Source: Ylistrum balloti
Lineage: Eukaryota
Length of the DNA stretch: 64,000 nt
Direction of reading: 5' to 3'
Assembly: GCF_031769215.1 (NCBI RefSeq)
Contig: NW_026782237.1
Span: 1,116,001 to 1,180,000, forward strand
A model generated the notes under the pieces. It had not been told where the DNA came from, ran no database searches, and saw nothing but the letters and a program-made list of their open reading frames with translations. This document shows, piece after piece, positions 1 to 25,757 of the stretch (the stretch's first letter is position 1; every line of letters begins with the position of its first letter). Made by a program: the position numbers and the translations under genes.

Positions 1-1062
1 AGTACACCAGTATGTGCTATTGATCAAACAGTGTCTCACACTGTGACAAGTCAGACTAGGGAGGCAGGATAGTACACCAGTATGTGCTATTGATCAAACA
101 GTGTCTCACACTGTGATGAGTCAGACTAGGGAGGCAGGATAGTACATCAGTATGTGTTATTGTTTGTACAGTGTCTCACACTGTGACGAGTCAGACTAGG
201 GAGGCAGGATAGTACATCAGTATGTGTTATTGTTCATACAGTGTCTCACAGTGTGATGAGTCAGATCAGGGGGCTGGGATAGTCCATCAGTATGTGTTAT
301 TGTTTGTACAGTGTCTCACACTGTGATGAGTCAGACTAGGGAGGCAGGATAGTACATCAGTATGTGTTATTGTTCATACAGTGTCTCACACTGTGACGAG
401 TCAGACTAGGGAGGCAGGATAGTACACCAGTATGTGCTATTGATCAAACAGTGTCTCACACTGTGATGAGTCAGACTAGGGAGGCAGGATAGTACATCAG
501 TATGTGTTATTGTTTGTACAGTGTCTCACACTGTGACGAGTCAGACTAGGGAGGCAGGATAGTACATCAGTATGTGTTATTGTTCATACAGTGTCTCACA
601 GTGTGATGAGTCAGATCAGGGGGCTGGGATAGTCCATCAGTATGTGTTATTGTTTGTACAGTGTCTCACACTGTGATGAGTCAGACTAGGGAGGCAGGAT
701 AGTACATCAGTATGTGTTATTGTTCATACAGTGTCTCACACTGTGACGAGTCAGACTAGGGAGGCAGGATAGTACATCAGTATGTGTTATTGTTCGTACA
801 GTGTCTCACACCGTGATGAGTCAGATCAGGGGGCTGGGATAGTCCATCAGTATGTGTTATTGTTCGTACAATGTCTCACACTGTGATGAGTCAGATCAGG
901 GAGCCGGGATAGTCCATCAGTATGTGTTATTGTTTGTACAGTGTCTCACACTGTGATGAGTCACACTTGGGAGGCAGGATAGTACATCAGTATGTGTTAT
1001 TGTTCGTACAGTGTCTCACACTGATCGATGAGTCGGACCAGGGGGCCGGGATGGTACACCAG
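1..1062 (-). repeat. 70-bp minisatellite (~15 copies, runs off window start) derived from the LINS1 CDS end and stop codon
   Basis: Period 70 (agtacaccag at 1, 71, 421). The terminal 72-bp copy (991-1062) is the last 21 LINS1 codons + TAA + 6 nt. Block 71-420 is repeated at 421-770. Confidence 0.95.
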
Positions 1063-6608: not shown

Positions 6609-8569
6609 CAGAGCTTGCAGAGGTTTTAATTTGCAGTTGCGTTTGTCTCCCTTCCATCTGTCCAAGTTTTTGGTAATTAAAATGTACCTGATCACTACAA
6701 ACTTCAAGATTTGACAATTTTATTAATGACACACTGCTCTATAGACAAAAACATTGCTTATTTCGAGATGGTGCGGACATAATTTTGGTGTTTTGGTGGA
6801 TCTTCATAATGGTGTTTCTTCTGGTTGTTTCCCGTGTTTGAAGATGAACCAAATCTGGCAAGTAGTCTGCTGGAAAGTTCATCACTCAAAGGAAACAGTT
6901 ATATCTGTATTTTCTCTTAAGTATGCAATTTATTCTTTCGTTGCCAGTTAGTTATCTTCCTTAGTTAGGTAAGAACAGTTGGAAACATTCCCTTCAGTTA
7001 AGATCACTTTCACCGAAACTTACTGAATGCTAGCAGACTTTTTGAAGGTATCAACTAAGTAGACGATTCTGGTATCTCCAGGTACTGAATTGATGGTGAT
7101 GTCTTGATCTCCTACGTGTGAAATAGCTAGATTTGCTTTGGTGCAGATAGGTCATTTCAAGAGAGAGAGTTATCAATTCTATTTGTGTGAAGCCCTCCTT
7201 TTCCACAAAATCTACAAATATAAAATTGTTCCTTTACATAATCAAAATCCTTTGTAATATTTATGTGAATGGAAAGATAAAATTATATTTATGTATTGTT
7301 ATAGTAAAATGATATGTGAATGTTTTCTACCGAAAGCTTATGTTTGTTAGCTATAGCACAACACTGGTTAGGTGATAACGTGGTAACCTAGGATTGGAAA
7401 GGATACAACCACAAACAATAATTATTGAATTAAAAAACGATAACTGATACGACATACCTGCAGTGTTAATCAAGGAGGTGACAATATGTGATAGATTTGG
7501 TTAACATTTAGGTAGTCTTCTGTAAGATTTGGGTAGATTGTCACTCCCATATTATCTGTTCATAAATTCTACTATACTTAATGATATGTTGGGAAAATTG
7601 GCTGAGCATTTATGACTGTTACCAGGATAAAGACAAAGAATAAGGCCTATTATATAATAGTTCTCACTTATTAATTGACTATTATTTCCTGATGGCTACA
7701 ACATTACATGTATATTTTACAATTTTGGAAGATCTATTGGAACAGAAAAGCCCTCTCCACTCAGTGTTCATGGGAATCATCAGGAGGAAAGCCACAAATT
7801 TGTGTATAATATGCAAACTAGCCTATTATATATACGTCCATTGGGATATGGTTTTGTTACTAAAAATAGTCAATATCACTTAAAATTTTGCTTTTTCAAT
7901 GATTGCCCATGTAACATTTATAAAGTCATGAAACGTCATACAAGTGCTAGAATAAAAGCTGGAAAGTACCAGAAATAGATGCAATACTCGCATCCTATAT
8001 TGCCTTTGTAACGATGGTATAGCTACAATCACAGCGACCGTTACATCTAGTTTCTAAGTAGCCAGCACTTTCAGTAAGCATCTCTTTGTAAAAAAATTAC
8101 CTATCTTGTCATAAGTTAATATGAGTGTGAATTATATATTACAAAAGTTACTGTTAAATGATTTTGGTGATTTATAGTAACACATCCATACCTCAGTTGG
8201 CATACAGTGTAATGGGCCAGGTTGCTTAGTATATGCAAATTTGTGATTTTCCCTGACCTGTTTATCTTAGAATAATTATTCCCAATGGAATATTCACATA
8301 CCGGTATATATGTACACTGACCAAAATATTATGAGCTATATGTTGTTCCTAGAAAACAAAATATAATGTTTACGATGTAGTTTGTTAATTGTAGAGTTTT
8401 TAATGAGAATGAGCTACCAAAGAATCCCAGTGAATGAATGTATTTTAAGAATGTTCTTGTCTGTATTATCTTTCAGATTGATGTGAAACTGGATGTGCTG
8501 AAGTAAGGCTTGTTTTGCTTAAACGGGAGGAAGCTTGTTTCTCCAAATTCAAGCAAGTTAAATACCAAA

Positions 8570-11500
8570 ATGAGTACCAAGCTGGAAGATGAAGAAACCC
8601 AGTATAATGTAGTGAGGGAAGGGAAGGCTGACATACTCCAGCCTAAATCTGTGTTCTACAATCCTGTACAGGAGTTCAACAGAGATCTCACTGTAGCCGT
8701 TATATCAAACTTTGCTCAATTACTTCGAGAAGAAATAAAAAATGATACTTCAAAAAACAAAAGGCATTTAAAACCCAAAAATGATAAGAAATGGCCAGAT
8801 ACGAGTGGGGAAGTTGTACAAAAAACTGATGTGAAGGAATCAGAAGAGCAGACCTGTGATGGTGATGTAGAAGCTGGCAAGAAGTATGCTGATGGTATAT
8901 CAATCTTGGAAGGCCTAGCAGCATCTGGGCTGCGGTCCATCAGGTTTGGGTTGGAAATTCCAGGTGTTCAAAGGATTGTCACCAATGATTTTGATAAAAC
9001 TGCTGTAGAAGTTATACAAAAAAATATAGAGAGAAATAAACTTGAACACCTTGTCACTTCTAGCTTAGGAGATGCTTCTATGGTAATGTACATGAGTAAA
9101 GGAACAGATGCTGCATTTGATGTGATTGACCTTGACCCTTATGGAGGTGCATCCCAGTTTCTTGATGCTGCAGTGCAGTCTGTTGGTGAAGGAGGTTTAC
9201 TGTGTGTCACATGTACAGACATGGCACTTCTTTGTGGAAACACACCAGAAAGTTGTCGGGCAAGATATGGAACTATGTCATACAGATCGGCTTACTGTAA
9301 GGAAATGGCACTCCGCATCCTTCTGCAGTCTTTGGAGACGACTGCTAATAGATATTCAAGGTATATTGTGCCAATGATATCTATCAGTGCTGACTTCTAC
9401 ATTCGAGTTTTTGTGAGAGTTTTCACAAGTGCAGCAAAAGTTAAACTCTCATCACTTAAGTTGGCTAACATTTATCACTGCTCAGGTTGTGGGGCTTTTA
9501 CCATTCAGAAGCTGGCTAGAAAAATACCAACAAAAGGTGACAATTTCAAAATGGCTGCAGCACATGGGCCTCCTGTCACAGAGATATGTGAACATTGTGA
9601 ACACAAACACTATGTTGTAGGTCCAGTATGGGCGGACAGACTTCATGACACAGATTTTGTGAAAAAGGTCATCAGTTATGTACAAAAGAAGTCATCTGAC
9701 TTTCAGACCCACAAGAGAATAGTCGGCATGCTTAGTCTGGTCAGTGAGGAGCTCAAAGATTGTCCCATGTACTATGTCATTGATGATGTGTGTCAACAGG
9801 TTCACCTTTCCTCCTTCAACCAGGAAATATTCATGTAAGGATGATATGATCTTCTGTTTATATTCTTATACAAGGGAGGTTATTTCACACTAATAATTTT
9901 CAGTTTCACAACTGCATAGAATGGGATGTGGTTGCAATTTAAATAGAGAATTTTTCTGTCATGTTTACCTAAACCATAAAAAATGGATTTATCCTAATCA
10001 CCTTGAAGATACAGGGTTGACTGTTGTATGAAAGCTGTAAAAAAAGTTCTTTAATCACATGAAAAAAATCTTAAATGTTCACAAATTTTTCATTGGTAGT
10101 AAGCAATTTTCAAAGTACAGACAGAAACATCGTCAGAGTTCATTTCTGATATCTTGTTAACTTGGTAGGCCATGCCACAACGACAGTTTTTTTTTCTGAG
10201 CAGCAATTTGATTCAACATTTTTTAAAAGAGATATTTCATGTTGTTTTTTCAGAACTTGTATAGAATCTCCTCCATCGGTTTTTAATCAATTTGTTTAAA
10301 CTTGGTAGGGTTTATGCATTATAATTAAAGTTTTATGAATAGCATTTTCAATGATAATTGGAAGAGTGATTGCCCTTTGCATTTTCAGCATTTTAATCTT
10401 TAATCATGTCCATTTTCTCTGTTTTCAACCTGTGTCTTTAAAACTTGTTATAATTAATCACAAAGAAATGCAGCATTGTTGTTCTTCCCATTGTTATATT
10501 CATTTTAATGCAATGTATTTCTCTGTGACATGGAGCAGGTGTATATTGTTCCGACCCGTGGTATTTCTGTCTAAATCATACTATAAATTTGATAATATTT
10601 TAATTTCTAGGTCTGCTTTGTTGAATGCTGGTTTTGAAGTTTCTATGTCTCATGCTGAACAGAATTCCATCAAGACAAATGCATCAAACAGGGATATTTG
10701 GGTAAGATAACATACGTGCAGTTCGGTCATGCAATGAAAAAATAGAACGTCAGAACATTTTGAACTAGGAGTGGTTGTACATAAACTTGAACTCTGAAGT
10801 TGGAATTGTTCTTCTTTCAAAGTTGTGAGATAGTGGCCAGCTTATTGTCACCATCTAACAAATTTGAGGCGTGTCTGAAAGTGTGTATACTATCAAAAAG
10901 GAACAACTACATAATGATTTTAAAAGTTTCATCAAGTAGAAGCTTCATATGATGGGTACAACATATAAATAAATCTTTATTTTCATATCAAATTATGGAA
11001 TAGGTAATGTGTACATTCATTCCATTTTTTAATGTGTTATAAACTCATTAAAACTCGTTAAAATACCTAATCTGCAATATGACATGTTAAGTGTTATCAA
11101 AAATTCTGTATAATGCTGCTGTATGTTTGTCAGAGGTAATGTAGTCAGGGCTCTTGATCTGCCAGATTTGGGGCCGATATTTGGCCCAATTCCCAATGCA
11201 AAATAGTATCTTTTTTTCCCAATTTAGACCCCAAGTGTTGAAAGACACAAGTGTTTACGAGTTTACAAAAGTTAGACCCTGATGACAGGGTCCTATCTGT
11301 TCACCATCATCATCTTTATCACTGTCTTTTTAACTTTATAGGATATTGTCAGGTCATGGGAGAAAACACATCCTGTAACTGAAAAGCGACGTGTACCAGG
11401 ATCAGTAACAGCCAATATCCTGTCCAAGGAGCCAATCCTGAAAGTGTCATTTGATCTCCACCCTGGAGCAAAGCAAGAGTCCAAGAAACGAGGACTGTCA

Positions 11501-12246
11501 CGATATCCACAGAATCCAGAGAAATTCTGGGGACCTAAACCAAGGGCTAAAAAGTCAGAGGTTGACTCTACAGAATCCATGGTAGACAAAAGGATAAAAC
11601 TGCAGGGAAAAAGGAAGAAAAATCAGGAAGTCAGTAATAGTCACTCAAGTATGATCTTATTAATTCTAAATATGCTTGTAGTAAGCATGAGAACTCGTAT
11701 CTCAGCTTTTATCCAAAACTTTGTTTTGTTGTGAGACTTAGTGTTGAATTATAAATGCAGCACAGGTGCTATAGATTGAAGGATTTTTGTTTGTTACAAC
11801 ATTTTGTCTGTAACTCGACAGCAAGTTCACATTTTCACAATGTTTGTAATTCTCATTGATATAAATGTTTCGTAATTGAATGTTCAATATTATCTTAAAT
11901 TCCCTGCATAGAAAAACCATGTAAGTTTTCAATTCTTTTCACAATTCTAATAAAGATCATTGCAACAGTGATGTTATAACTAAAATTGATAAGTAATGAG
12001 TTTATCACTGAAATGATTACTTAATTTACTGCTGAAGTCATCAAAGTCAGTTTACGGCTGACTTCCTTTATCAGTTTACCACCAAAGTCATTAAAATTCA
12101 TTAAAATTAGTTGAATGCTGACTTCCTTAATTAGTTTACTGCTTAAAACATTAATCAGTTTTACCACTGAAGTAATACCTTTTTTGCAGACTGATGAGAC
12201 TGCTGCTGGAAATGCCAAGAGGAAACTAGATTCATTGCCTTCCTAG
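8570..12246 (+). CDS. TRMT1: tRNA (guanine26-N2)-dimethyltransferase, paralogue A (~566 aa), predicted nuclear form
   Basis: Exons 8570-9834, 10611-10701, 11342-11629, 12190-12246 (1701 nt, phase-consistent). Motifs VFYNPVQEFNRDLT, ILEGLAASGLRSIRF, FDVIDLDPYG, GGLLCVTCTD, GPKPRA. Basic tail KRIKLQGKRKKNQE..AKRKL. The last junction (gaa|gtcagt to ttgcag|act) is moderately supported. Confidence 0.93.
11995..12180 (+). repeat. Degenerate tandem repeat directly upstream of the last TRMT1a acceptor
   Basis: Repeated gctgacttcctt..agtttac..aagtcat motifs ending at the ttttgcag acceptor (12189). Confidence 0.5.
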
Positions 12247-12319
12247 AGAGACCACACCAGTGAATGGTGTGGCATTGCTGGGGATTATACAACAACTCTT
12301 TCAGAACTTGCACAGTGCG

Positions 12320-13130
12320 GTTGGTGAAGGACTTGTTTAAAAGAAGGCTCCCTGGAGAGACAAATGTGAATTGTGAATGGTGAGGAGCTTGTTACAATAA
12401 AGGTTTCCCATGGAGATAAATGTGAAGTGTGACTGATGAGGGCCTTGTAACAAAAATGTTCCTTAGAGAGAGATATGTGAACTGTGGCTTGTTTCGCTGA
12501 AGGTGGCTTACAGAGATAGATATGAAGTGTGGCTGTTGAGGGACTTGTAACAAAGAAAGCTTCCTAGACAGGTCATTGTAAATGTTACTGTTGAGGGTCT
12601 TGTAACAAAGAAAGCTTACAATACAGGTCATTGTAAATGTGACTGATGAGGGACTTGTAAGACTGAATGTTCCTTAGAGAGAGATATGTGAACTGTGGTT
12701 TGTTTCAGTGAAGGTGGCTTACAGAGATAAACATGAAGTGTGACTAATGAAAGTCTTGTAACAATAAATGGTCCTTAGAGAGAGATATGTGATCTGTGGG
12801 CTTGTTTCAATGAAGGTGCCTTACAGAGATAAATATGAAATGTGACTGGTGAGGGTCTTTTAACACAGAAAGCTTACAATGCAGGTCATTGTATATGTGG
12901 TTGATGAGGGTCTTGCATCAATCCAGATGCCCTTGACAGTTCATTGCAAATGTGGCTGGTGAGGGTCTAACAATGAAAGCTCCCTAGACAGGTCATTGTA
13001 AATGTCATTGTTGTGAGGCTTGTTTAAATGACAATTACCGAAAGAAGTCACTAAGAAGTTTGACTGGTGAGGAGCTTGTAAAGGGCCCCTAGATATGTAG
13101 CTTTTTTTATCACTGGTGAGGTACTTGTAC
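12320..13130 (+). repeat. Degenerate ~50-bp minisatellite with higher-order structure, TRMT1a 3' UTR or flank
   Basis: Recurrent gtgactgatgagggNcttgtaac...acaggtcattgtaaatg. The block ttccttagagagagatatgtgaactgtgg..gaaggtggcttacagagata recurs near 12460, 12670 and 12775. Confidence 0.8.
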
Positions 13131-14288
13131 CAAAGGAGGCAAAATGTAATTGGTAAGGGGCTTATAGCAGTCATCTTAGGAGAGAGTTGCTACTTGTCTT
13201 CCTAGAAAGGACACGGTCATGATTACAAAAAAATCATGTTAACAATTTTCAAAGCTGTCAAAAGTGAAAAGGATGCGTGTTTCAGTTTGATATTTTAAGA
13301 GAGCCCCCTAGCAGCAAGCTATGAACTTGGCTTATGCTCAAATTTCATCAAAATAATTCTTTTTTAAAACTTAAGCCTTATGAGCACATTGAAGTGGAAG
13401 AGGCCATTTTTGTAATGTGAAAATATGAAAACTAGTTATAGTCATGGCTTACTTTTAGCAGTATTCATGTCTTTTTGAAGCAACATCACAGTAAAATGAT
13501 ATTTTTGCTCTTTTGCCAATATTCTGCTTTGACAGAAAAAAACTTTTAAGAATTACATACTGGTATGTACATGGAAAGAATTCTAGCTCCATGTTGATCT
13601 GAATTATGGAAAAAAAACATTAAAATGGCACTCTTCATGGCATGCTATAACAAATCTTTAACAAGGTGTGGAGTGTGCTATTTTTCTACTTTTTATACAT
13701 TTCATTTCAATTATCTTAACCATCTGACACATCTTTCCAGAGTATGATTTAGATGTGTGAAAACTACAAATAGCCTTGTATCTGTGCCATTTCATTTAAA
13801 CAGAATTGATTCCACCAAAACTGCCACATAGTTATAATATTCACATGTCTAGCATAATTACCATACACAAACATTTATTTCATCCTATTCATTCCTAATT
13901 TCATTGAAGTGTACTCGATCATTGAAAAAATGAAAAAAGTTGGATTATAAAATCCTGAAAATTACCCAACTTTGAGGAACATGACTATTTGTGCGAGTTG
14001 ACTTAAATAATTAATCGGTTTTACTTGCAGACACTAACGCACAAGTTCAGACATGAAATAGCAGCAGAGATTAGTAACCTTCATTATGCTGTTATATGTA
14101 AAACTCTTTAATACCTAAGGAGGCCTTATGATGTCCCAAATATTTCCTCATTATAACACCCTGTTAAGCCCTGGGAGAAAAACCATGGAAATTTCAGTTG
14201 AACAGTTTGGACCTACACCAAATTAAACTATCTAGGTTTCTGGAATAAGACTTAAATTTGAACTTTAATCAACGTCTAGTTCAATATG

Positions 14289-14903
14289 TCATGCGCTTAC
14301 CCAAATGAATTTATATTCTGCATCCACCACTGCCACTAATACTATCGAATGGAATCCCTTATGATTATAATACAAGGACCTACCATTATTCGGACACCTC
14401 ATGGCAATGTGTTTTCCATCCGGAGCTCCAACATCATGATGAAGATTCCAGCGGCTTTCGAACTGATCAGCTATCTCTCGCCATCCATCTGGTGTAGAAG
14501 GAATGGCTATAACTTCATCCGAGTATTCTGCCAGAAAAGCTTCGCACACTTCACGGGTCACCATGGATATGGTGTTGTGGGCAACACGGAAACTGTACAT
14601 CAGGCTTTTGTAACTGTCCCTGGTTGCAAAATGTCAGAGAGTGATGGTCAGTTTACATCCAGGTTCAATTGCCTTTCAAAACCAGGTGACAGTTTTGGTT
14701 ATTCTTGGAGTCAGTCTAAACGGAAGTTCATTAAACATTGCTGGTTCCAGTCTTAGGAAGTTCCTGAAAGCAGATTTATCTGAGGGCAAAACATCTGCAA
14801 TATGAATCCAGAATAAAGATAGAAGGGATAGGATTTTAAGCAAAGTCGAAATGCTAGAGTCAATGCCGAGCAAAGAGTTTTTCTCGACCTTCACGACAAA
14901 CAT
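14289..14903 (-). mobile_element. PIF/Harbinger transposase (HARBI1-like DDE_Tnp_4) remnant
   Basis: FRVAHNTISMVTREVCEAF..WREIADQFESRWN..GAPDGKHIAMRCP..YYNHKGFHSIVLVAVVDAEYKFIWV; truncated and frameshifted. Confidence 0.88.
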
Positions 14904-15059
14904 TGCTCATTTCTGTAGAGAAATTTGAGTCGCTGGTTTACTTTTTTAACAATTGAATCTACTATTTCTTCACCTGATAGCAAGTCATTAATGCTATACA
15001 AAGATATTTTATACACTTCATAACTTTAATGTCATGATTATTGCACAATATTTTAAAAT

Positions 15060-15545
15060 TCATATTTGTAGGTTTATCCAATTTTCTTTTAGAGCCAAAA
15101 ATAATATTTTCTGTTTTACATAAATGAGAGAAAGCTTGTTATCCACTAACCATTCATGACAGAACTCTAACACCAAAGACATTTTTTGCGATATTACTGC
15201 TGGGTTTAGATGGGGAAAAAAGTGTAGCAGAATCGTCTGCATACAACATAACATGCAGTTAGAATCAATGCTGACTTGCATATCATTGACATTTATCAAG
15301 AACAGAAGAGGACCTAACAAATTCCCCTGAGGTACCCCACATTTTATGTTACATGACTCGGATGTTACTTCATTGATATTTACGATTTGTTTCCGTCCCG
15401 AGATAGGATCTAAACCATTTTAGTGATTCCACTCCAAGAACAGAGAGCTTCTCACATAAAATATTGTGGTCAGCTATATCAAATGCTTTTTGCAAGTCGA
15501 GCAATACCATACCTGTAAACAAGCCTTTGGAAGACTGAGATTTGA
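15060..15545 (-). mobile_element. LINE RT fragment, downstream half of the outer element of a nest
   Basis: Minus strand gives KGLFTGMVLLDLQKAF, then LGPLLFLINVNDM and a degenerate YADD (tatgcagacgat). Continues the frame broken at ~17485. Confidence 0.85.
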
Positions 15546-17484
15546 TATTTAATAGGATTTAATAGGATAATAGTGAACGCAGGCATTTCTGCCTCTGTAT
15601 TCACATCAATACAATGTATTATTAATATAAACATAATATTAGACTAGATACAAGATGCTGTATGATCGTACTTCAGTTCAAGATCTTTCCAGAAATCGTC
15701 TAGGTGTTTTTCAAAATCATGAACGTTAAGTGATGATATTGCCCATTGAGGGAGGCTATTCCAAGTATCAATTATTCTTTGAGTAAAATAATGTTTTCTG
15801 ACATTCAAATGACAATGTTTTTTAAATAATTTTTTACTATGTCCACGAGTTTTTCCTGCAGGGTCGAACATTCCCTCCACCAGCTTTGGATCAAATATCC
15901 CATTCATGAACTTAAACACGTTTATCATATCTCCACGTAGACGACTGTATATCAAGGTTGGGAGATTCAAACGGCGTAGCCTCTCATTGTAGCTTAAAGT
16001 TTTTACTACCGATGAAGGGAAGGTGTGAACGACACACTTACTATAGTATTAAACACACCTTCCCTTCATCGGTAGTAAACCGAAATATTTTGAGCCAACC
16101 CTCCCCCCCCCTTTCAAAAAAATAAATAAATAAATAAAACTAGTACAGAAGGACTATATGACTATATTCACTGTTAAGATGTTATGAATTCTCCGGTCCC
16201 AGTGATCTAACCTGTTGATATATATTTTGTACGTAAATTAGTTTAGTACTGAGTAACTTTCGTTTTCTCGTTGTACCATCGATGGAAAAGCAAGGTATCA
16301 TTGGGTGTAGAACGAAACAAATGGGACAACCCAATTAGGTCTGATCTGAAGCCACCTGTGACTTGGACTCTTCCAATTAACCTCTCGCGACAGTCGAGTG
16401 TTTGTAAAATGCCGATGTCTGCACAGTATTTTTTCACCTGGCTCCACCCACAATCGATCTAGACTTGGCTCTGCCAATCAGAGAGCTTGTTGCATAAATT
16501 TAAGGAATTCGATTGGTGAAGTACTTCAGTACAATACTATCAATACTTTGTTCAGTAATACAGTACTTGAAACGTTCACACCTTCCCTTCATCGGTAGTA
16601 AATCCCGGTAGTAGTTTTGTCGATCTCCTCTGGACATTTTCTATCCGTTCGATGTCCTTAATTCTGTGTGGGGACCAAAAACTTGCCGCGTACTCTAGGT
16701 GCGGTCGTACTAGAGCTTTAAACAAATTCCTGAACATATTTTCGTCCAAATAAACAAATGATCTTGTTACCATTCTATTAGCTTTATTTATTGCTTGTTG
16801 GATATGTGTTGTAAAACTTAAATCTTGATCTACCACAACTCCCAGGTCTTTTTCCAATGCAATGGTTTCCAATGTTATGATTTTACCTTCATTGTTTGTT
16901 ATATGATATTGCGATTCTCTTTTTTTATGTTTTGTTGACACAGTCATAACTTTACATTTATTTGGATGGAATCGTAATAGCCACTTATCCGACCACTTCA
17001 TCAAATTACAGAGATCTTCTTGGAGTAAGTGCTCATAGTTACCATCCGATATTGTTCTATAAAATTTAGTGTCATCCGCAAACATGTAGGTTGGTGAAGA
17101 TGTGCATTCCGGTAGATCGTTAATATGTATGACGAAAAGTATCGGACCTAGTACGCTCCCTTGGGGTATTCAGCTAATAACTTTGTGCTGTGCTGATGGT
17201 GTACCGTTAACAATAACTCTTTGTTTCCGATCTGTTAAAAAACTTTCAATCTATTCAACTAACTGAGTGCTAAAACCATAACCTCGGAGTTTGTTTAGAA
17301 GGCGTTTATGTGGAACTTTATCAAACGCCTTCATAAAGTCCATATACACTATATCCAATTCTCCGCCATTATCTAAAGTTGTAGTTCATCCATCCATGAC
17401 TTTCAGTAGTTGTAGCACTGTTGACCTCCCAGACAAAAATCCAAATTGTTTATCACTTAATAATTTGTTTTCCTCCATATGTAT
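15546..17484 (-). mobile_element. 5'-truncated CR1-type LINE inserted into the outer LINE
   Basis: KQFGFLSGRSTVLQLL, YMDFMKAFDKVPH, IPQGSVLGPILF, MFADDTK, LVRPHLEYAASFWSP..VQRRSTKLLPG, then RLNLPTLIYSRLRGDMI..TQRIIDTWNSLP. Short (TCCTATTAAA)2 tail near 15547-15568. Confidence 0.92.
16006..16598. mobile_element. 593-bp MITE with perfect 26-bp TIRs and TA target duplication (Tc1/mariner-type)
   Basis: CTACCGATGAAGGGAAGGTGTGAACG at 16006 and its exact reverse complement ending at 16598. TA at 16004-05 and 16599-600. Removing the element restores the RT frame PGFKTLSYNERLRRL. Confidence 0.93.
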
Positions 17485-17950
17485 AGTCTAACATATGTAT
17501 TAAACATGTGTCAGTAGAATATTTGCTTCTGAAATCGGACTGAAGTTCATAAAGTAAGTTATTTCTTATCAAAAAAGTTTCTAACTGGCTATACGTAGTG
17601 CATTCAAGAATTTTTGATTCTACACTTAGAATACTAACAGGTCTGTAGTTTTCGGCGTTAGGTCTATCTTTTTTCTTTAAAAGTGGTTTGACTTTGGCTA
17701 ATTTTAATTCATCTGGAACAATACCATCTGAAATTGACATATTTATAAGAAAAGTGAGGTGAATTTTAATAACTGGGGCAGCGTCTCTGTGAAATCTAGC
17801 TAGCAAACAATCAAGTACCACAGATTTAGATGTATTCAATTTACACAGCTCTTTATAAACAAAGTTTTCGCCCACGTGTTTTAAATTAAATTCGTTTCAA
17901 CTTTTCGATCTATAGAAGTTTATTTACTGTATCTGACGAAGCAACATATT
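17485..17950 (-). mobile_element. LINE RT fragment, upstream half of the outer element
   Basis: ORF 17453-17875: LINMSISDGIVPDELKLAKVKPLLKK..ENYRPVSILSVESKILE..QSDFRSKYSTDTCLIHMLDY. Confidence 0.88.
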
Positions 17951-18197
17951 TTCCCTTTCCTTGGGGAAACTCCTTAACTAAATTGGCAGCTACATTATTG
18001 GTTTCTTTTGCTGATCATGGCAAATTAGCTAAGGTATAAACAACCAAGCTGAGCTATATATGTATAGTGTCATTTTAATCTGTAATCATCCAGTTTTTTT
18101 ATCATCAGATACAGCTTCAGTTTGAAGTAGCTGATCAATTTCACTAGTGTTTTTCCTCTCAGACTGTTGATGAGATAATGAAAGATGTCTCCTTGTT

Positions 18198-19460
18198 TTA
18201 GAAGAATGAATCCAAGTGTAGACTGCTTCTTTCAGCTCGAAAAGTAGACAAAGTGTCTGGCATCAATTTGATCCTCATGAAATTGTGCAGGGTAACCTGA
18301 TTCATCCGAGATCTATATGTAGTTTTGAGCTTATTCATGGCACTAAAGGCTCTTTCACAGAGTGCTGTGCAAGCGGAGAGTGTCATCATAATTTTCACAA
18401 GGACTAGAATGGACTTCAAATTGTCTGGATTTAGTGTCAACAAGTTAGCACAAGCAATTTGAGGACATGTTGTTCGCTGTCTGCTCACTTAAACATGAAG
18501 CAAAGTGCACCAATATATCAGAAACTTGTTCATTGCCAAATGATCTCAAATCAGTCTCAGAGACTTACCATAAAGCCAACACCAACTTCCTAACAACATC
18601 TGTCACAAATAAGTCATCACTCTGGTAGCTTTCACCGAGATTTTTCAAAACTGAGGTTACATCAAGCATGAAATGTAAAAAATTCACAAACTGTTTTCAA
18701 TTCTGTTAACAGACCTAGATTTTGCTGCATCTTCTCTAGATCTTTGACGAACATGTTCTAAGTGGTAGACAGCAGCAGCATAGTGCTTCTCAAGAGCAAT
18801 CAAAGACCTGTGTCTACTGACTAACGGATTTGCAGTACTCCACTGAAATATGCCTGATTCTTTGAGTTCCCGCCGGGTTTTTTTTTTTTTTGTAATTTTA
18901 GAATAAAAGTAATATTTTAAGATACTTTTAACAGTATTTTGAAATTGCTGCAAATATGGAGCTGTCTTTACAGCATCCACAACTCCTAGTTCCCTGTTAT
19001 GTGCAACACAGTGGATTGCTAACTGATGAGGAACTTTCTCTGTTAACTTTGTAGCAACACCTGATTGTTTGCCCATCATTACGGCAGCACCGTCAAAATT
19101 GCAGCCAACTAGTTTGTTTTCAATATCAGCCTGAGATAACCCAACAGCCTGCAAACCCTTCTCAATGCCTAATAATACCCCCTCAGCAGTAGCATTTTCA
19201 AGTGTAACTACGTCACATAAATGTGTTTTGGGATAGCCTGAATGAGATCTAACCGACACTGCCTCTTGTTCTACTATTCCAGCATATGCACTATCATCAG
19301 AGAAAATTCAAATAACCAAGTTTCCTTCAACTCATCCACAACAGATTTGACTTTAGTTTCAGCTATTGATTTTATGAAGGTCGTACATACCTTATCATTT
19401 TTATATTTTGGACCAAGATCTACCACATTTTCCCCCTGTAAATTACAAAGACCTTGAAAT
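18198..19460 (-). mobile_element. hAT transposase remnant (ZNF862-like family), frameshifted
   Basis: GCNFDGAAVMMGKQSGVATKL..IHCVAHNRELGV, and the hAT dimerisation motif TALCERAFSAMNKLKTTYRSRM..LHNFMRI. Confidence 0.88.
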
Positions 19461-20403
19461 GAATTAAATGACTTATACTGCTTTGCAACATAAAATGCAG
19501 TGTCGAACAGAAAGCGAATTTGGTTTTGTATGTTATCACTTAGAGTAAGGGATATTTTTTAAAGGCCCAACATAATCTGGTCGACTACCAAGTTTCTTTT
19601 CACACTTTAAATGTTGTTTGGACTTGTGATGAGTAAGAGTGTCTTTCCTAAATTTTCCTGCACCCCCGGTTCCCTTAAAAAGCCACTATAATTGTCTGTT
19701 ATGCTAGGAAATTAACGACAAGCGGTACAATACATTTGATCTTTTTCCTCGTCATATTTAACGCATGAAAATTCCTTCGTCTACTAAGATTTGAAATTCC
19801 GTTTTTTCTCCTTTATGGTTTCTGATTGTGTCGCTTTAGAGTCCCCCTTACTCTCACTGCTAGTACCAACTTTAGTAAAGAAGGCATCGATAGTTCGTTT
19901 TGCCAATTTGTCGGTAGGCTTGAACACAACTTATTGCTGACATTAACTACGAGAAAAAAAAAGATAGATGATAAAATACGAAACGGTAGCCGCTATGCAC
20001 ATGCGATCCGGAATTCAATCAGCCAGATGAACACGTGTTGTCGATCTGATATATAATGACAGTTATCATTTGAATTTGTTTTCTTTATTTGAATTGTTTT
20101 CACTTACGTCTGTAATAAAATCATTCTAAATATGGATGCATAATTCTTTTAATTCCGGAACATGGTGCTATGTCCGGAGATATGTTACCCTATTATATCA
20201 ATCTACCTCAATGAAATGCTTGTATGAATTGATTCAGGTGCGTACTCACCATGCTGTACTCCGTTATTTGCGTGGTTCGCATACGTTGTACCGCGTTTTA
20301 ATACGGAGAGTAAACAATGGAAATTAAGACTGGTTGATCTTTTTACGTGACTTTAATTAATTTAGTGTCTATATTTATGGGGAAATACATTTTATAAAAC
20401 TAA

Positions 20404-20504
20404 TTGCACTCGTCCCAAGTGACGAGCCCAGTTGAAGAACCGCTCGACCTGGACCGTTTTTCACCCGTCCAGGACGGATGGACGAGTGCATTTTTCGCAC
20501 TCTG
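20404..20504 (-). mobile_element. Probable hAT-like transposon terminus with subterminal inverted repeat
   Basis: Inverted pair tgcactcgtcc (20405-) / ggacgagtgca (~20480-20490). Minus strand starts CAGAGTGCGAAAAATGCACTCGTCC. The matching other end was not found. Confidence 0.4.
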
Positions 20505-21881
20505 ACTCCATTGTTCTCCACATATATGATATGACAACATCATATGATTAGAGGTCATGTTCTGGTGACACTTGCAACCCTCTGTACTTAACTCGGGGAG
20601 AATGGTCAAATTCACTATCTCGTCTGATACAAGTCATTTTGTTACAACATTGTAAGACCAATGTGATTGAAACTCGGATCCTAAGATGCTCTCCACAAAA
20701 GAGTGAAAAAAGACCCAGCATTTTAAAAGGACATAATGTAACGAAATGCATTAATGCACGTAAAATTGCCACAAATAGGACCATGCAAGATATTTCACCC
20801 ACCTTCATTTACTTTCAAGATTCAGTAGACTGAAAATTATTGAGCTGATTAAATGCATGTCAGATTCTTTGTGGAAAATAACAGTGAGAACTAGGATTTG
20901 CATTTTAATTAGATTGTGTTGTCTTTCCACAAATACTACTTGAATGCTGACCCTGGCAGGGGTCACTGATTTACCTAAGTTATGGTAAGGCTGGCATTCT
21001 AATGTTCATTGTGAACTTATTTTCAAGTTCAAGCAATGGGATTAACCGGTGCAGCTGACATTTTGCATGGAATGGTTCTAATAGCCACAACCAGTGTTAT
21101 ATGGCTACCAACTTGAAGACCTCATTTTAAACTTCTTCTCTACTTGCTTTGATGCCATTGAGCAGAAACTGGTTAGGATATTCAGGAAAGGGTGCTGATA
21201 ATATCTTTTTCTGTATGGCTGCCACAGCAACCATTTTTGTAATATGATTGCACAGTTGTGGCCTTCCTGCACAAAATTAATTGTGAACTTCTCTGAGATT
21301 TAGCAGGAACTTTGAAAGATTCTTTGATGGTCCCTATCACGTTTAGCTGTCCTCAGCTGTAGGTGGCCACTATGGCTGCTGTTTTAATGAAAAAAATAAT
21401 ATCTACCCCAGGTCCAAATGATGCCATTGTTTTGAAAATTTATGGGGATGTTAAGGAAATATGCCAATTTAGAATATAGAGAACTGATAGATAATAAATG
21501 ATTATTAATGTTGATTGTAGAGTAGAAGTGTTCTACCAGACTTTAAATAAGCATTTATGACATGATGTATTTGTGTTAGCCAATAAGCATTACTAAACAA
21601 TTTCAGCATGAGAAAATAAGGGAAGGACAAAGAAGTATGAGAGGAAAAAAGACTGTAAATTTTGCTAAAATGAAAGTTACTTTAGTTGAAATATTTTCAT
21701 GGGTACAACTTCTGTATAAAAATCAACCTTCAGTATACATACCACTATATATCTGGTGCATTCCTTAAAATGATATAACATGGGAATATGATTTTCCTAA
21801 TTCATGACAGAAATTTTAATTTTGATTCAGAGAATATGTTTGTTTTTATTAGCACACAGCAGATTCTACCAGATGTGAACA

Positions 21882-24800
21882 ATGCTGTATCGGGTGATGT
21901 TCAGATGGATGTGTAAGTCGTTACCCAAGAGGAGAGTGCAATGTCTTTGTTTTCACACCAGTTCTAGTGTGAACATAAAAGAATTCAGTGAGGATTCTCG
22001 GTACAGTAAAGTCAACGAGGGAAAGGCAGAAATACTCCACCCAGCTAATGTGTTCTACAATCGAGTTCAGGAGTTTAACAGGGACCTCACTGTGGCTGTA
22101 ATTTCAAACTTTGTTCAAATACGTCAACAGGAGATTAGGCGTAGTAAAGCGCGGAGAAGTGATTGTGTAACTGAGAAACATGTCATAGCAGACGATGATA
22201 TTGAGGTACCAACTGGAAGTACATATGATCATGAGGTTATGGAAGCTGGGAGGAAGTATGCTGATGGTATATCAATTTTGGAAGGCCTAGCAGCATCTGG
22301 GCTGCGGTCAATCAGGTTTGGGTTAGAGATTCCAGGTGTGAAGCGAATTGTCACCAATGATTATGATAAAACTGCTGTAGAAGTTATACAAAAAAACATA
22401 GAGAGAAATAAACTTGAACACCTCGTCACTTCCAGCTTAGGAGATGCTTCTATGGTAATGTACATGAGTAAAGGAACAGATGCTGCATTTGACGTGATTG
22501 ACCTTGACCCTTATGGAGGTGCAACCCCGTTTCTTGATGCTGCAGTGCAGTCTGTTGGAGAAGGAGGTTTACTGTGTGTCACATGTACAGACATGGCACT
22601 TCTTTGTGGAAACACACCAGAAAGTTGTCGGGCAAGATATGGAACTATGTCATACAGATCGGTTTACTGTAAGGAAATGGCACTCCGCATCCTTCTGCAG
22701 TCTCTGGAGACGACTGCTAACAGATATTCAAGGTATATTGTGCCAATGATATCTATCAGTGCTGACTTCTACATTCGAGTTTTTGTGAGAGTTTTCACAA
22801 GTGCAGCAAAAGTTAAACTCTCATCACTTAAGTTGGCTAACATTTATCACTGCTCAGGTTGTGGGGCTTTTACCATTCAGAAGCTGGCTAGAAAATTACA
22901 AACAAAAGGTGACAATTTGCAAATGGCTGCAGCACATGGGCCTCCTGTCACAGAGATATGTGAACATTGTGAACACAAACACTATGTTGTAGGTCCAGTA
23001 TGGGCGGACAGACTTCATGACACAGATTTTGTGAAAAAGGTCATCAGTTATGTACAAAAGAAGTCATCTGACTTTCAGACCCACAAGAGAATAGTCGGCA
23101 TGCTTAGCCTGGTCAGTGAGGAGCTCAAAGATTGTCCCATGTATTATGTCATTGATGATTTGTGCAAGAAAATTCACGTCAGAGAAATGAAGCAGGAATT
23201 ATTTATGTAAGTATTACTAAAAACACCTATAATTTGATGATATTGACTCTTGATGTGTTTTTGATGTGGAATTTGTTATTAATTAACCTCTGCTCCAAAA
23301 AAGGTAACATTTATACTTTTAATGTACCTGTATGGAAGTTAAGTACATTGCCAATAGTACATTCACAAACAAAATTTGATAAGTTGTGTTGTTCTTTATT
23401 TTTTTTTCAAAATTGAACAAAATGCCCATTTCTGTAACTTTTAACTTGAAATACAAAGATGCAGTTGCATAACAACGTATTATATTCATTAGCGCATATG
23501 CACCACTTTTCAGAAATACAAAGTTTAGGTCAGGTGGTGATAAAATCTACATCCCATGTGTCTGAGCAGGTCTTAATCCATGATTCTTAACAATAAAAAT
23601 CAGTTCTTTTCATATATTTCTTGTTCAATCAGCTATGGATTCTGTATAAAAATCACTGTTAAATAAATTTTTCCATTAAATCCATCTCAAGCTTAACATT
23701 CATAAAACTTAATAATTTTAGTTAAAATGACTTTATAATATGGAATAATGTTAGTCCAGAATGGGATTGCCTCTGACCTGGGAACAGTTGTGCTAAAGTT
23801 TTCAATGGTATTATACTTTGGATGCCTTAATTAACTCAGAAATGTTTTTTGAAAATTTTGTTTCAATGGAAATAATCATAAAAAGCTGATAATGTGTCAT
23901 TATTTCAAGGGAGACAATTAAGATGTCATGATGACATGACTTGTGAAAAAAAATGTAAAGATTATTGTTATTAATAATATTTCTGTAAAACCAAGCTTTA
24001 ATTTGTTGCGATATCAATTCTGTTACATGCAGTTGATTTGTGTTGCATCCTATAAGTAGGTCATAGGATATATGTTTGGGATAATTTTTAAAACTTAGAA
24101 GTGTTTTTTTATAGAAAAGGTTCAGTCCAGTTGTTTCTGTATGGCTCTGATTATCTAACAGTTATGTCAGTATTTAATTGTAAGAAACTCTATCTGGTGT
24201 CAAGTTTCTTTTGTTATGTATGCTCACAGAACCTTCCTTATTTCTAGGTCTGCTTTGTTGAATGCTGGTTTTGAAGTTTCCTTGTCTCATGCTGAACAGA
24301 ATTCCATCAAGACAAATGCATCAAACAGGGATATTTGGGTAAGATAACATTGTAGATGTAAATCTATGGAGGGCCACTGAGGCTCACTAGATGTATCTAT
24401 AGTACTATCATTACTTTGACTGGATTTCTGATCAGATCCAAAAGTCAAGTCTGGAAATTTGGGTTTAAGTCAGAGCCAGCAGAGATATTTAGGACTGTAT
24501 TGTTGCATAACAATGGTAACCACAAATATAGAGAGGACATAACTTGAAGTTTGAGGTGGAAATGTCCATTTTCTACTGCATCTACCGGGGTACTTACAAA
24601 ATTGATCATGTGATAAAAAGAATATTAAACTTGTCTCCATTTGATATATGATTTATGGAGCATCATGCATTTTTTATGTACCTCACCAATGACTTACTAA
24701 AATGGAAAATTCATGAGAATTACTTAGCAACAGATACATGACCGTTGGGTTACTTGTTAATTTTGTTCTTATCTTCAGGACATTATTAGATCATGGGAGA

Positions 24801-25033
24801 AGATACATCCAGTGCACGAGAAGAGGCTTGTAACAGGTTCAGTCACAGTCAATATTCTATCTAAAGAGCCAGTCCTCAAGGTGTCCTTTAAGCACCACTC
24901 AGGAGCCTCACAGGATTCTAAGAAAAAGGGACTGGCAGGATACCATAATAATCAGGAAAAAAATTGGGGACCAAAGCCAAAGACTAAACGATCAAAGGTT
25001 GGTTGTTTAGGATCTGTGAGAAACAAGTGGTAG
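21882..25033 (+). CDS. TRMT1: tRNA (guanine26-N2)-dimethyltransferase, paralogue B (~556 aa), predicted mitochondrial form
   Basis: Exons 21882-23206, 24248-24338, 24779-25033, with the same intron positions as paralogue A. N-terminus MLYRVMFRWMCKSLPKRRVQCLCFHTSSSVNIK is Arg/Ser-rich with no acidic residue. Stop occurs before the basic tail. An alternative donor aag|gttggt at 24998 cannot be excluded. Confidence 0.92.
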
Positions 25034-25757
25034 TTTGCAGGGATAGAGTCTGGAAGTCTGTAATAATCACACATTTATCACAAGTAGGACATTACCTATG
25101 CCCTCAAAAGCTTGGAGTTTGGTGGCTACAAGGTAGGTTCCATGGACAGTCTGTCTCAGACTGGTTCAGTGTAGGGACAATGGAGGCTTTCGCCATGGAC
25201 TGCCACAAAGTTAGAGATGAGGGGTAGTGAATATGACTACAATGAAAGTTGTCTGGAAAGTGTTTCACAATGACTTTTTCAGTGTAGGGACAAAGGAAGC
25301 TCCCTCAATAGACTGCCACAAAGTCTGACTAGTGGAGTGGTGGATATAATGAAGATTTCCTCAAAAGGCTATCTTGGAATGACTGGTTGTGTCATAGGTT
25401 GACACTTGTATCAAAACACTTCACAAGGTGTAGGAGGCATTTGAAGCTTCATTATAGAATGGAGTAATTTGAAAGCTCGAATCACTTGTTTTGCTAAAGT
25501 ATCCCATCTTTCTGTCCCAGCTGGCCAATGATTTATACAGCACTGAATCCATTTAACATCAAGATGATCTACTGGTATATGAAATTTAGTTAAAATTCCT
25601 CCATCTGTACAGGAGAAAACTTGACCACAGTTTTCACTCTTTGATCCGATTTCTTTATTTTTAGGGGGCTATATCTTTCTGTTTAACATTCGCTGACTAA
25701 TGCATCAGACCTGCTTTAGAAGTCACCTGCAGCTATTCTAGACTTTTAGAGTTCGAA

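What the first reader, a model, noticed from the sequence alone, without database searches (positions are those of the whole stretch)
8477..25075. TRMT1 tandem duplication that splits nuclear and mitochondrial targeting by reciprocal loss
Established: yeast TRM1 and human TRMT1 are single genes serving nucleus and mitochondria, using an N-terminal presequence, alternative starts and a basic NLS. Seen here: copy A starts at an acidic MSTKLEDEE N-terminus with an in-frame stop 22 codons upstream, and keeps a basic C-terminal tail. Copy B has an Arg/Ser-rich, acid-free N-terminal extension, lacks the equivalent of the second Met, and stops just before the basic tail. Each copy retains a decayed relic of the signal it lost. 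Inference: a clean subfunctionalisation of one dual-targeted tRNA m2,2G26 methylase into compartment-specific enzymes. I cannot confirm whether this is described for this lineage.
Basis: partly seen in the sequence, partly recalled or inferred. Interest (0 to 1): 0.85.

Follow-up and report, generated by a model that had tools for sequence, protein, structure and literature searches.

The report
Scallop TRMT1 pair with split targeting
The saucer scallop carries two neighbouring copies of the tRNA-methylating enzyme TRMT1: one has lost the mitochondrial address tag and the other the nuclear one, a tidy but still untested case of duplicated genes dividing one ancestral job.

Summary
The window is Ylistrum balloti (GCA_031769215.1). 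It carries two same-strand TRMT1 genes that match RefSeq proteins exactly. Copy A is 566 aa in 4 coding exons (8570-12246). Copy B is 556 aa in 3 exons (21882-25033).

A starts at MSTKLEDEE, with TAA 22 codons upstream, and ends in a bipartite basic tail. B has an acid-free basic 33-aa N-terminus, no second Met, and a stop at the start of the tail. The old tail persists as a significant 3' relic.

New here:
- The duplication is not specific to Ylistrum. Pecten, Argopecten and Mizuhopecten all have A and B in the same synteny.
- A close outgroup transcript, an oyster and a pearl oyster have one gene with presequence, second Met and basic tail.
- Mizuhopecten A still keeps the presequence, so that species looks like an intermediate.
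- B tails were lost differently in each genus.
- The catalytic core and exon 2 are homogenised by gene conversion. Fourfold-site divergence is 4.5% between the paralogues against about 40% between orthologues, and AU tests reject a single history.
- Both copies are under purifying selection.

The compartment split itself is inferred, not shown. No targeting predictor was available, B keeps a KRSK motif, and no paper describing this was found. It is a new example of a known kind of event.

The parts
8477..8569 (+). Copy A 5' UTR part of the first coding exon. It occupies the position of the ancestral presequence and now carries in-frame TAA 8504-8506 and two minimal uORFs (ATG TGA 8481-8486; ATG TGC TGA 8493-8501).
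   Evidence: The acceptor position is conserved in all four A genes. In Mizuhopecten the same stretch encodes MLLVPRLCPSRQLLVSWRRIIFRQIYTNST. Sequence similarity is not above shuffles.
8570..9834 (+). Copy A coding exon 1 (residues 1-422): acidic N-terminus MSTKLEDEE and the TRM methyltransferase domain.
   Evidence: Exact match to RefSeq P0121.
10611..10701 (+). Copy A coding exon 2 (30 codons).
11342..11629 (+). Copy A coding exon 3. Its last 14 codons (11588-11629) encode KRIKLQGKRKKNQE, the first half of the basic tail. The donor is gaa|gtcagt.
12190..12246 (+). Copy A coding exon 4 (TDETAAGNAKRKLDSLPS plus stop), the second basic cluster. KK-X12-KRKLD fits the classical bipartite NLS pattern.
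   Evidence: Conserved in Pecten, Argopecten and Mizuhopecten A proteins.
12247..21881 (.). Spacer between the copies, made of transposon debris on the minus strand (Harbinger-type DDE, reverse transcriptase and hAT fragments).
21882..21980 (+). Copy B presequence-like N-terminus (33 codons, no acidic residue, 7 K/R). No Met at the position of A's start.
   Evidence: Same pattern (..F/L-R-S..RR-I/V...F-H-T-N/S-S) as the other B genes, Mizuhopecten A and the outgroup.
21882..23206 (+). Copy B coding exon 1 (presequence plus TRM domain).
   Evidence: Exact match to RefSeq P0003.
24248..24338 (+). Copy B coding exon 2.
24779..25033 (+). Copy B coding exon 3, ending ...KTKRSKVGCLGSVRNKW with TAG at 25031-25033.
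25034..25085 (+). Relic of the lost basic tail and of the old exon-3 donor in B's 3' UTR (tgcaggga...ggaagtctgtaataatcac). The KRKKNQ codons are deleted.
   Evidence: (z = 10.1, 0 of 500 shuffles).
8870..9796 (+). Gene-conversion tract 1 in A. Its partner in B is 22242-23167, at 96.8% nucleotide identity.
22242..23167 (+). Gene-conversion tract 1 in B.
10603..10713 (+). Gene-conversion tract 2 in A: exon 2 plus 8 and 12 intron bases. Its partner in B is 24240-24350, at 98.2% identity.
   Evidence: There are 2 differences between the Ylistrum copies against 9-12 to other species.
24240..24350 (+). Gene-conversion tract 2 in B.

Best explanation
These are two functional TRMT1 (tRNA m2,2G26 methyltransferase) paralogues. 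They come from one tandem duplication in the scallop stem lineage.

The ancestral gene made two products from one exon: a long form with a mitochondrial presequence, and a short form starting at a second Met. Both ended in a basic bipartite tail that I take to be the nuclear import signal.

The inferred order of events is:
1. Early on, copy B lost the second Met, so every B protein carries the presequence.
2. B's tail then became dispensable and decayed differently in each genus. In Ylistrum it ended in a premature TAG.
3. A's presequence became redundant and was destroyed in Ylistrum, Pecten and Argopecten, but not yet in Mizuhopecten.

Meanwhile recurrent gene conversion keeps the catalytic core and exon 2 of the two copies nearly identical. 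The paralogues therefore differ essentially in their N- and C-terminal ends.

Shown here: the gene structures, the age and synteny of the pair, the conversion, the purifying selection, and the complementary loss of sequence features.

Inferred: that A works in the nucleus/cytosol and B in mitochondria.
For: - Exact gene models. Both are TRM domain proteins.
- All four annotated pectinid genera have A and B in the order Cactin, LINES, A, B, IQCH.
- One gene carries presequence, second Met and bipartite basic tail in the outgroup transcript L008, in oyster and Pinctada and in many other animals.
- Human TRMT1 has an N-terminal MTS and a C-terminal bipartite NLS, and its C-terminally truncated fragment loses nuclear localisation (PMC11139479; PMC12120178).
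- All B proteins lack the second Met and have 5-8 K/R and no D/E in the first 30 residues. The three short A proteins start with a net-acidic stretch.
- B tails were lost by TAG (Ylistrum), TGA one codon earlier (Pecten) and a new donor (Argopecten), and eroded in frame in Mizuhopecten.
- The A tail is highly conserved. C-domain dN/dS is 0.02-0.05 for A against 0.14-0.25 for B.
- The core is homogenised. Fourfold-site divergence between A and B in Ylistrum is 4.5% (n = 134) against about 40% between Ylistrum and Pecten orthologues, and 35-67% in the ends.
- Segment trees and AU tests conflict. The core rejects paralogue clades (p = 4e-34). The ends reject species pairs (p = 1e-9 and 0.002).
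- A deeper-rooted tree places the duplication after the split from the outgroup.
Against: - No localisation data, and no TargetP, MitoFates or NLS predictor could be run.
- The hydrophobic moment of the presequences is not above shuffles of the same residues.
- Ylistrum B still has KRSK and KKK clusters near its end.
- Presequence-bearing proteins can be dually localised.
- The scallop tail is not inside a zinc finger as the human NLS is, so it might be an RNA-binding tail rather than an NLS.
- A could in principle start at a near-cognate codon (TTG 8510), giving a 20-residue basic extension.
- Expression of B could not be checked.
- It was not checked whether scallop mitochondrial tRNAs carry G26 or m2,2G26.
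Confidence: 0.6

Rival explanations
1. The division of labour is only partial. B is mainly mitochondrial but still reaches the nucleus or cytosol through its remaining basic clusters or inefficient import. Alternatively, A still reaches mitochondria through an internal signal or a non-AUG start. The pair would then be quantitatively, not cleanly, subfunctionalised.
For: - B keeps KTKRSK and SKKKG.
- Mizuhopecten keeps both signals in A and an in-frame tail in B, so long coexistence without full partition is possible.
- An in-frame TTG at 8510 would add a basic, acid-free 20-residue extension to A.
- Amphipathicity of the presequences is unremarkable.
Against: - The A tail is under very strong constraint while B tails decay in four different ways.
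- All B genes have lost the second Met.
- A's upstream frame is closed by TAA, and its two upstream ATGs stop at once.
Confidence: 0.25
2. B has taken on a changed function, not just a compartment. Examples would be a different RNA substrate set, or m2G rather than m2,2G, by analogy with the separate job of vertebrate TRMT1L. The end differences would reflect new RNA contacts rather than targeting.
For: - B's C-terminal domain evolves about 5-7 times faster in dN than A's.
- B's N-terminal variable insert differs strongly from A's.
- In human TRMT1 the C-terminal region mediates tRNA binding (PMC11139479).
Against: - Gene conversion keeps the catalytic core 96-97% identical, which argues against catalytic divergence.
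- B's dN/dS stays well below 1 in all segments.
- The lost and kept pieces coincide with the ancestral targeting elements.
Confidence: 0.1
3. The copies arose by independent recent duplications in each species, or B is a decaying redundant copy.
For: In the core and exon 2, the paralogues cluster by species with 96-100% bootstrap support.
Against: - The N-variable and C-domain segments reject species pairs (AU p = 1e-9 and 0.002).
- B-specific residues (DDLCKK.H...KQE, IRSWEK, loss of the second Met) are shared across genera.
- Synteny is shared.
- Introns between the copies are unalignable.
- B reading frames are intact, with dN/dS 0.08-0.25 across four genera.
Confidence: 0.03

Closest known systems
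Human TRMT1 and yeast Trm1 (a single dual-targeted gene)
   Same: Same enzyme family (PF02005, E 1e-111). The ancestral bivalve gene has the same logic: an N-terminal mitochondrial presequence, an internal start, and a C-terminal basic nuclear signal.
   Different: In scallops the two products are encoded by two genes. The scallop proteins lack the C3H1 zinc finger in which the human bipartite NLS is embedded. By my recollection the yeast NLS is internal; this was not checked here.
Subfunctionalisation of duplicates by subcellular relocalisation (the duplication-degeneration-complementation model applied to targeting signals)
   Same: An ancestral gene with two targeting elements, both duplicates retained under purifying selection, and complementary degenerative losses.
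   Different: Here only the ends are free to diverge, because the catalytic core is repeatedly homogenised by gene conversion. Related genera show different stages and different lesions, with Mizuhopecten as an apparent intermediate.
Vertebrate TRMT1L (paralogue of TRMT1)
   Same: A second Trm1-family gene kept alongside TRMT1.
   Different: By my recollection TRMT1L is an old, highly diverged paralogue with its own domain layout and target. The scallop copies are a lineage-specific pair, 82% identical overall, and both hit TRMT1 orthologues best. TRMT1L itself was not compared here.
Concerted evolution of tandem paralogues by exon-limited gene conversion
   Same: Paralogues are closer within a species than orthologues are between species. 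Synonymous sites are homogenised. Tracts end where homology ends at the diverged introns and gene ends.
   Different: The tract boundaries spare exactly the segments that carry the presumed targeting signals. In Pecten the copies are now 7.2 Mb apart yet still show 12.6% fourfold divergence.

Membership tests
Trm1/TRMT1 tRNA (guanine26-N2)-dimethyltransferase | TRM methyltransferase domain (Pfam PF02005) above the gathering score | tested here: met
   A scores 373.9 bits and B 370.9 bits against a cut-off of 27; the best hits are TRMT1 of molluscs and vertebrates.
Trm1/TRMT1 tRNA (guanine26-N2)-dimethyltransferase | C-terminal C3H1 zinc finger of metazoan TRMT1 | tested here: not met
   no C-x7-8-C-x4-5-C-x3-H piece in any frame of window 8-30 kb. 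All eight pectinid proteins and the outgroup end without it. Oyster P0020 has it.
Trm1/TRMT1 tRNA (guanine26-N2)-dimethyltransferase | m2,2G26 methyltransferase activity on tRNA | not testable with these tools
   Needs an enzyme assay or complementation.
Dual-targeted TRMT1 architecture (presequence, internal Met, C-terminal NLS in one gene) | Acid-free basic N-terminal extension followed by an in-frame internal Met | tested here: not met
   Ylistrum A has no extension (TAA at 8504-8506). Ylistrum B has the extension but no internal Met. The feature is met in outgroup L008, Saccostrea, Pinctada and Mizuhopecten A.
Dual-targeted TRMT1 architecture (presequence, internal Met, C-terminal NLS in one gene) | Bipartite basic C-terminal signal | tested here: inconclusive
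   A has KRIKLQGKRKK and KK-X12-KRKLD. B stops before them. The pattern match was made by eye against the classical consensus; no NLS predictor or assay was available.
Subfunctionalisation by complementary loss of targeting signals | The ancestor carried both elements | tested here: met
Subfunctionalisation by complementary loss of targeting signals | Both duplicates retained under purifying selection | tested here: met
   dN/dS is 0.05-0.11 in the core and 0.02-0.25 in the C-domain. Reading frames are intact in four genera.
Subfunctionalisation by complementary loss of targeting signals | The proteins localise to different compartments | not testable with these tools
   No predictor or experiment was available. 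The composition heuristic is consistent. The amphipathicity test was not significant.
Gene conversion between paralogues | Region-specific discordance of gene trees with statistical support, including at synonymous sites | tested here: met

The most novel reading that the evidence does not exclude
Scallop TRMT1 may be a natural time series of subfunctionalisation by targeting. A single early lesion, loss of the internal start in B, committed the pair. After that, the now-redundant signals decayed separately in each genus: A's presequence and B's nuclear tail. Mizuhopecten preserves the intermediate state. Gene conversion confines all divergence to the address-bearing ends. If so, the same catalytic module is kept as one evolving unit in two genes, and only the targeting ends are partitioned.
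Probability: 0.4. Interest if true: 0.6.

Novelty: new member of a known kind. Interest (0 to 1): 0.48.

Why it matters
TRMT1 is a textbook dual-targeted enzyme, making nuclear and mitochondrial forms from one gene. A lineage in which the two forms are hard-wired into two genes gives a natural separation-of-function system. Each compartment's m2,2G26 could be removed on its own.

The case also has features that suit teaching and testing models of duplicate-gene fate. These are an identifiable ancestral state, complementary degenerative lesions, different lesions in sister genera, a living intermediate, and gene conversion that isolates the targeting ends as the only diverging parts. The principle itself is well known, so a specialist would find this neat rather than surprising.

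Tried and rejected
- Hydrophobic-moment test of the presequences against shuffles was not significant (fraction of shuffles reaching the observed value 0.04-0.40). It is not used as support.
- Global alignment of A's 5' UTR relic to the Mizuhopecten A presequence and to B's presequence was no better than shuffles (z = 0.7 and -0.1). Only positional homology is claimed.
- Search for a relic or usable exon 4 downstream of B found only 'RRKLD' at 25611-25625 (E = 1.5), which is not significant.
- Search for a CCCH zinc-finger exon found none.
- The idea that Mizuhopecten A regained its presequence by conversion from B was rejected. Identity there is only about 50-60% with gaps and rises only after the second Met.
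- Independent duplications per species were rejected by AU tests on the ends.
- Look-ups of P0001, P0005 and P0007 by exact protein were not on record. Cluster members P0124-P0127 were used instead.
- Dewe et al. 2017 (PMC5640816) is not held. Its results are cited through PMC11139479 and PMC12120178.
- The species of the outgroup run SRR26445938 could not be identified.
- Literature searches for a description of this duplication found nothing relevant.
Full report
**What is there.** The window is a piece of the saucer scallop Ylistrum balloti assembly GCA_031769215.1, contig JAUZWB010001341.1. A locus fetched by protein identity is base-for-base identical to window 11882 onward.

Two 442-codon open frames lie on the + strand, at 8510-9838 and 21882-23210. 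Both are Trm1/TRMT1 methyltransferase domains (PF02005, E 1e-111 and 1e-110). I built exon models by requiring exact translation to RefSeq proteins:

| Copy | Protein | Coding exons |
|---|---|---|
| A | P0121, 566 aa | 8570-9834, 10611-10701, 11342-11629, 12190-12246 |
| B | P0003, 556 aa | 21882-23206, 24248-24338, 24779-25033 |

The 9.6-kb spacer between the copies is transposon debris on the other strand.

- A's ATG is at 8570. TAA at 8504-8506 is in frame, 22 codons upstream. The exon begins behind an acceptor at 8476/8477.
- A begins MSTKLEDEE. Its first acidic residue is at position 6, and it has 6 D/E in the first 30 residues.
- B begins MLYRVMFRWMCKSLPKRRVQCLCFHTSSSVNIK. It has no acidic residue before position 34 and 6 K/R in the first 30 residues.
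- B has I/N where A has its start Met.
- B stops at TAG 25031-25033, aligned to the codon just after A's 'DKR'.
- Downstream of B's stop, the old tail and the old donor site are still recognisable, with the KRKKNQ codons deleted. The alignment scores z = 10.1, and 0 of 500 shuffles reach it.
- A's upstream relic is homologous by position only. It lies in the same exon behind the same acceptor as in the other A genes. Its sequence alignment is not better than shuffles.
The full tail is KRIKLQGKRKKNQE-TDETAAGNAKRKLDSLPS. By eye it fits both monopartite (KRKK) and bipartite (KK-X12-KRKLD) consensus patterns.

**Comparative evidence.** The pair is not special to Ylistrum. Pecten maximus, Argopecten irradians and Mizuhopecten yessoensis each have an A-type and a B-type protein.

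The genes lie in the order Cactin, LINES (minus strand), A, B, IQCH (minus strand). In Pecten the two copies are 7.2 Mb apart on one chromosome, and each keeps its outer neighbour.

The ancestral state can be read from several single-copy genes:
- A close outgroup transcript (L008, 73% identical, species unidentified) has an in-frame MFVFRSSSALIRLYARTSTWTRIVYIHTTSR. This is followed by MDYEMEEHS and then a basic bipartite tail.
- The oyster Saccostrea and Pinctada show the same layout.
- Among 56 full-length homologues with at least 35 residues before the conserved EGKA motif, 32 have an internal Met within 25 residues of that motif.

For human TRMT1, the literature reports an N-terminal mitochondrial signal and a C-terminal bipartite NLS. 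It also reports loss of nuclear localisation when the C-terminus is removed (PMC11139479; PMC12120178).

**Pattern across genera.**
- All four B genes lack the second Met and carry the presequence.
- B tails are gone or eroded in four different ways:
  - TAG in Ylistrum.
  - TGA one codon earlier in Pecten.
  - A new upstream donor with an unrelated ending in Argopecten.
  - An in-frame but degraded tail in Mizuhopecten, where KRIKLQGKRKK has become RTIYLQGKRMK and AKKK has become AKMQ.
- A tails are nearly invariant.
- A presequences are destroyed in Ylistrum (upstream ATG now out of frame, plus TAA) and Pecten (ATA where the ATG would be). In Argopecten the region is too diverged to align.
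- The A presequence is intact in Mizuhopecten (MLLVPRLCPSRQLLVSWRRIIFRQIYTNST before the second Met).
- That Mizuhopecten presequence is not a recent copy of B's. Identity there is only about 50-60% with gaps.

The simplest ordering is duplication, then loss of the internal start in B (shared by all four genera), then lineage-by-lineage decay of the two redundant signals. Whether the three A losses are independent or one old event followed by decay is not resolved.

**Age and mosaic history.** Within Ylistrum, A and B are 96.8% identical over 8870-9796 versus 22242-23167, and 98.2% identical over exon 2 plus a few intron bases. They are only 73-80% identical at the ends, and the introns do not align.

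Fourfold-degenerate site divergence:

| Comparison | Segment | Divergence |
|---|---|---|
| Ylistrum A vs B | core (n = 134) | 4.5% |
| Ylistrum A vs B | C-terminal | 35% |
| Ylistrum A vs B | N-terminal | 67% |
| Ylistrum vs Pecten orthologues | core | about 40% |
| Pecten A vs B | core | 12.6% |
| Mizuhopecten A vs B | core | 12.2% |
| Argopecten A vs B | core | 38.8% |

Segment trees put paralogues together by species in the core (bootstrap 96-100). They put the B genes together in the C-domain (96), and three of the four B genes together in the N-variable part (100).

AU tests reject the paralogue-clade tree for the core (p = 4e-34). They reject the species-pair tree for the N-variable and C-domain segments (p = 1e-9 and 0.002). 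Exon 2 shows the same species-wise pairing, with 2 differences inside Ylistrum against 9-12 between species.

This is an old duplication with recurrent, exon-limited gene conversion. A protein tree rooted with other bivalves puts the outgroup transcript outside a pectinid A+B clade. Support is 100 for outgroup plus pectinids and 62-69 for the pectinid clade.

**Selection.** Core dN/dS is 0.05-0.06 for A orthologues and 0.08-0.11 for B. C-domain dN/dS is 0.02-0.05 for A and 0.14-0.25 for B. B is therefore a constrained, functional gene, but it evolves several times faster outside the converted core.

**What remains inference.** No targeting predictor or expression data were available. The presequence call rests on composition, position and homology. 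A hydrophobic-moment test was not significant.

Ylistrum B still has KRSK and KKK clusters. The scallop tail is not embedded in a zinc finger as the human NLS is. Scallops and the outgroup lack that finger altogether.

A near-cognate start at TTG 8510 would add a short basic extension to A. I consider this unlikely but cannot exclude it.

**Known or new.** Searches for TRMT1 with scallop, and for Trm1 with duplication and subfunctionalisation terms, found no description of this pair. The genes themselves are annotated in RefSeq as 'tRNA (guanine(26)-N(2))-dimethyltransferase-like'. The principle, duplicates of a dual-targeted gene dividing compartments by complementary signal loss, is well established. 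I file this as a new member of a known kind, with the added features of core-only concerted evolution and an apparent intermediate stage in Mizuhopecten.

**Earlier notes of this scan.** Three first-reader notes on the same window agree with what I found: s1-262883, s1-262919 and s1-263001. I tested the B relic and the homogenisation directly. The A relic holds only by position.

Noticed in passing
window 8870-9796 / 22242-23167 and 10603-10713 / 24240-24350: Homogenisation between the copies is limited to exons. Two separate tracts are 97-98% identical, while the intron between them (776 versus 1041 bases) does not align at all. The short exon-2 tract extends only 8 and 12 bases into the introns.
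   Followed up: yes
L003 (Pecten maximus LR736846.1 about 23.66 Mb) and L002 (about 30.86 Mb, reversed): In Pecten maximus the A and B genes are 7.2 Mb apart and inverted relative to each other. Each keeps its outer neighbour (LINES/Cactin for A, IQCH for B). A rearrangement therefore broke between the copies, yet their cores are still only 12.6% diverged at fourfold sites.
   Followed up: partly
window 8000-30000; L008; L009: Scallop TRMT1 genes and the close outgroup transcript lack the C-terminal CCCH zinc finger that oyster and human TRMT1 carry. In human TRMT1 this finger mediates tRNA binding and holds the NLS.
   Followed up: partly
L009 (Saccostrea) versus window 8570-12246: The oyster gene has 7 coding exons and scallops have 3-4. 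Two introns inside the catalytic region and one in the C-domain are absent in scallops, giving an unusually long 1.27-1.35 kb first coding exon.
   Followed up: partly
window 12247-21881: The spacer between the copies is minus-strand transposon debris. It holds a DDE_Tnp_4 fragment (14289-14600), reverse-transcriptase fragments (16576-17085 and 17453-17875) and a hAT dimerisation domain (18198-18488), next to an unassigned 191-aa ORF (18684-19259).
   Followed up: partly
window 8481-8501: There are two minimal upstream ORFs in copy A's 5' UTR: ATG TGA at 8481-8486 and ATG TGC TGA at 8493-8501. The second ATG is the likely remnant of the ancestral presequence start, now out of frame.
   Followed up: partly
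window 11630-11734: If the exon-3 donor of copy A (gaa|gtcagt) is not used, the frame stays open for 35 more codons into a hydrophobic stretch (..SMILLILNMLVVSM..). RefSeq isoform X2 (P0123, 555 aa) reads partly into this region (…NQEVSNSHSN).
   Followed up: no
window 997-3797, minus strand: Long minus-strand ORFs upstream of copy A (997-2064, 2304-2771, 3147-3797) probably belong to the LINES-like gene that lies head-to-head with copy A in Pecten and Argopecten. The two genes may share a bidirectional promoter region.
   Followed up: no
L007 6001-6056 (Argopecten B): Argopecten B has an extra upstream coding exon. It adds MSHKLRSSRIDALVRCCHS in frame before the conserved presequence Met; the other B genes lack it.
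   Followed up: no
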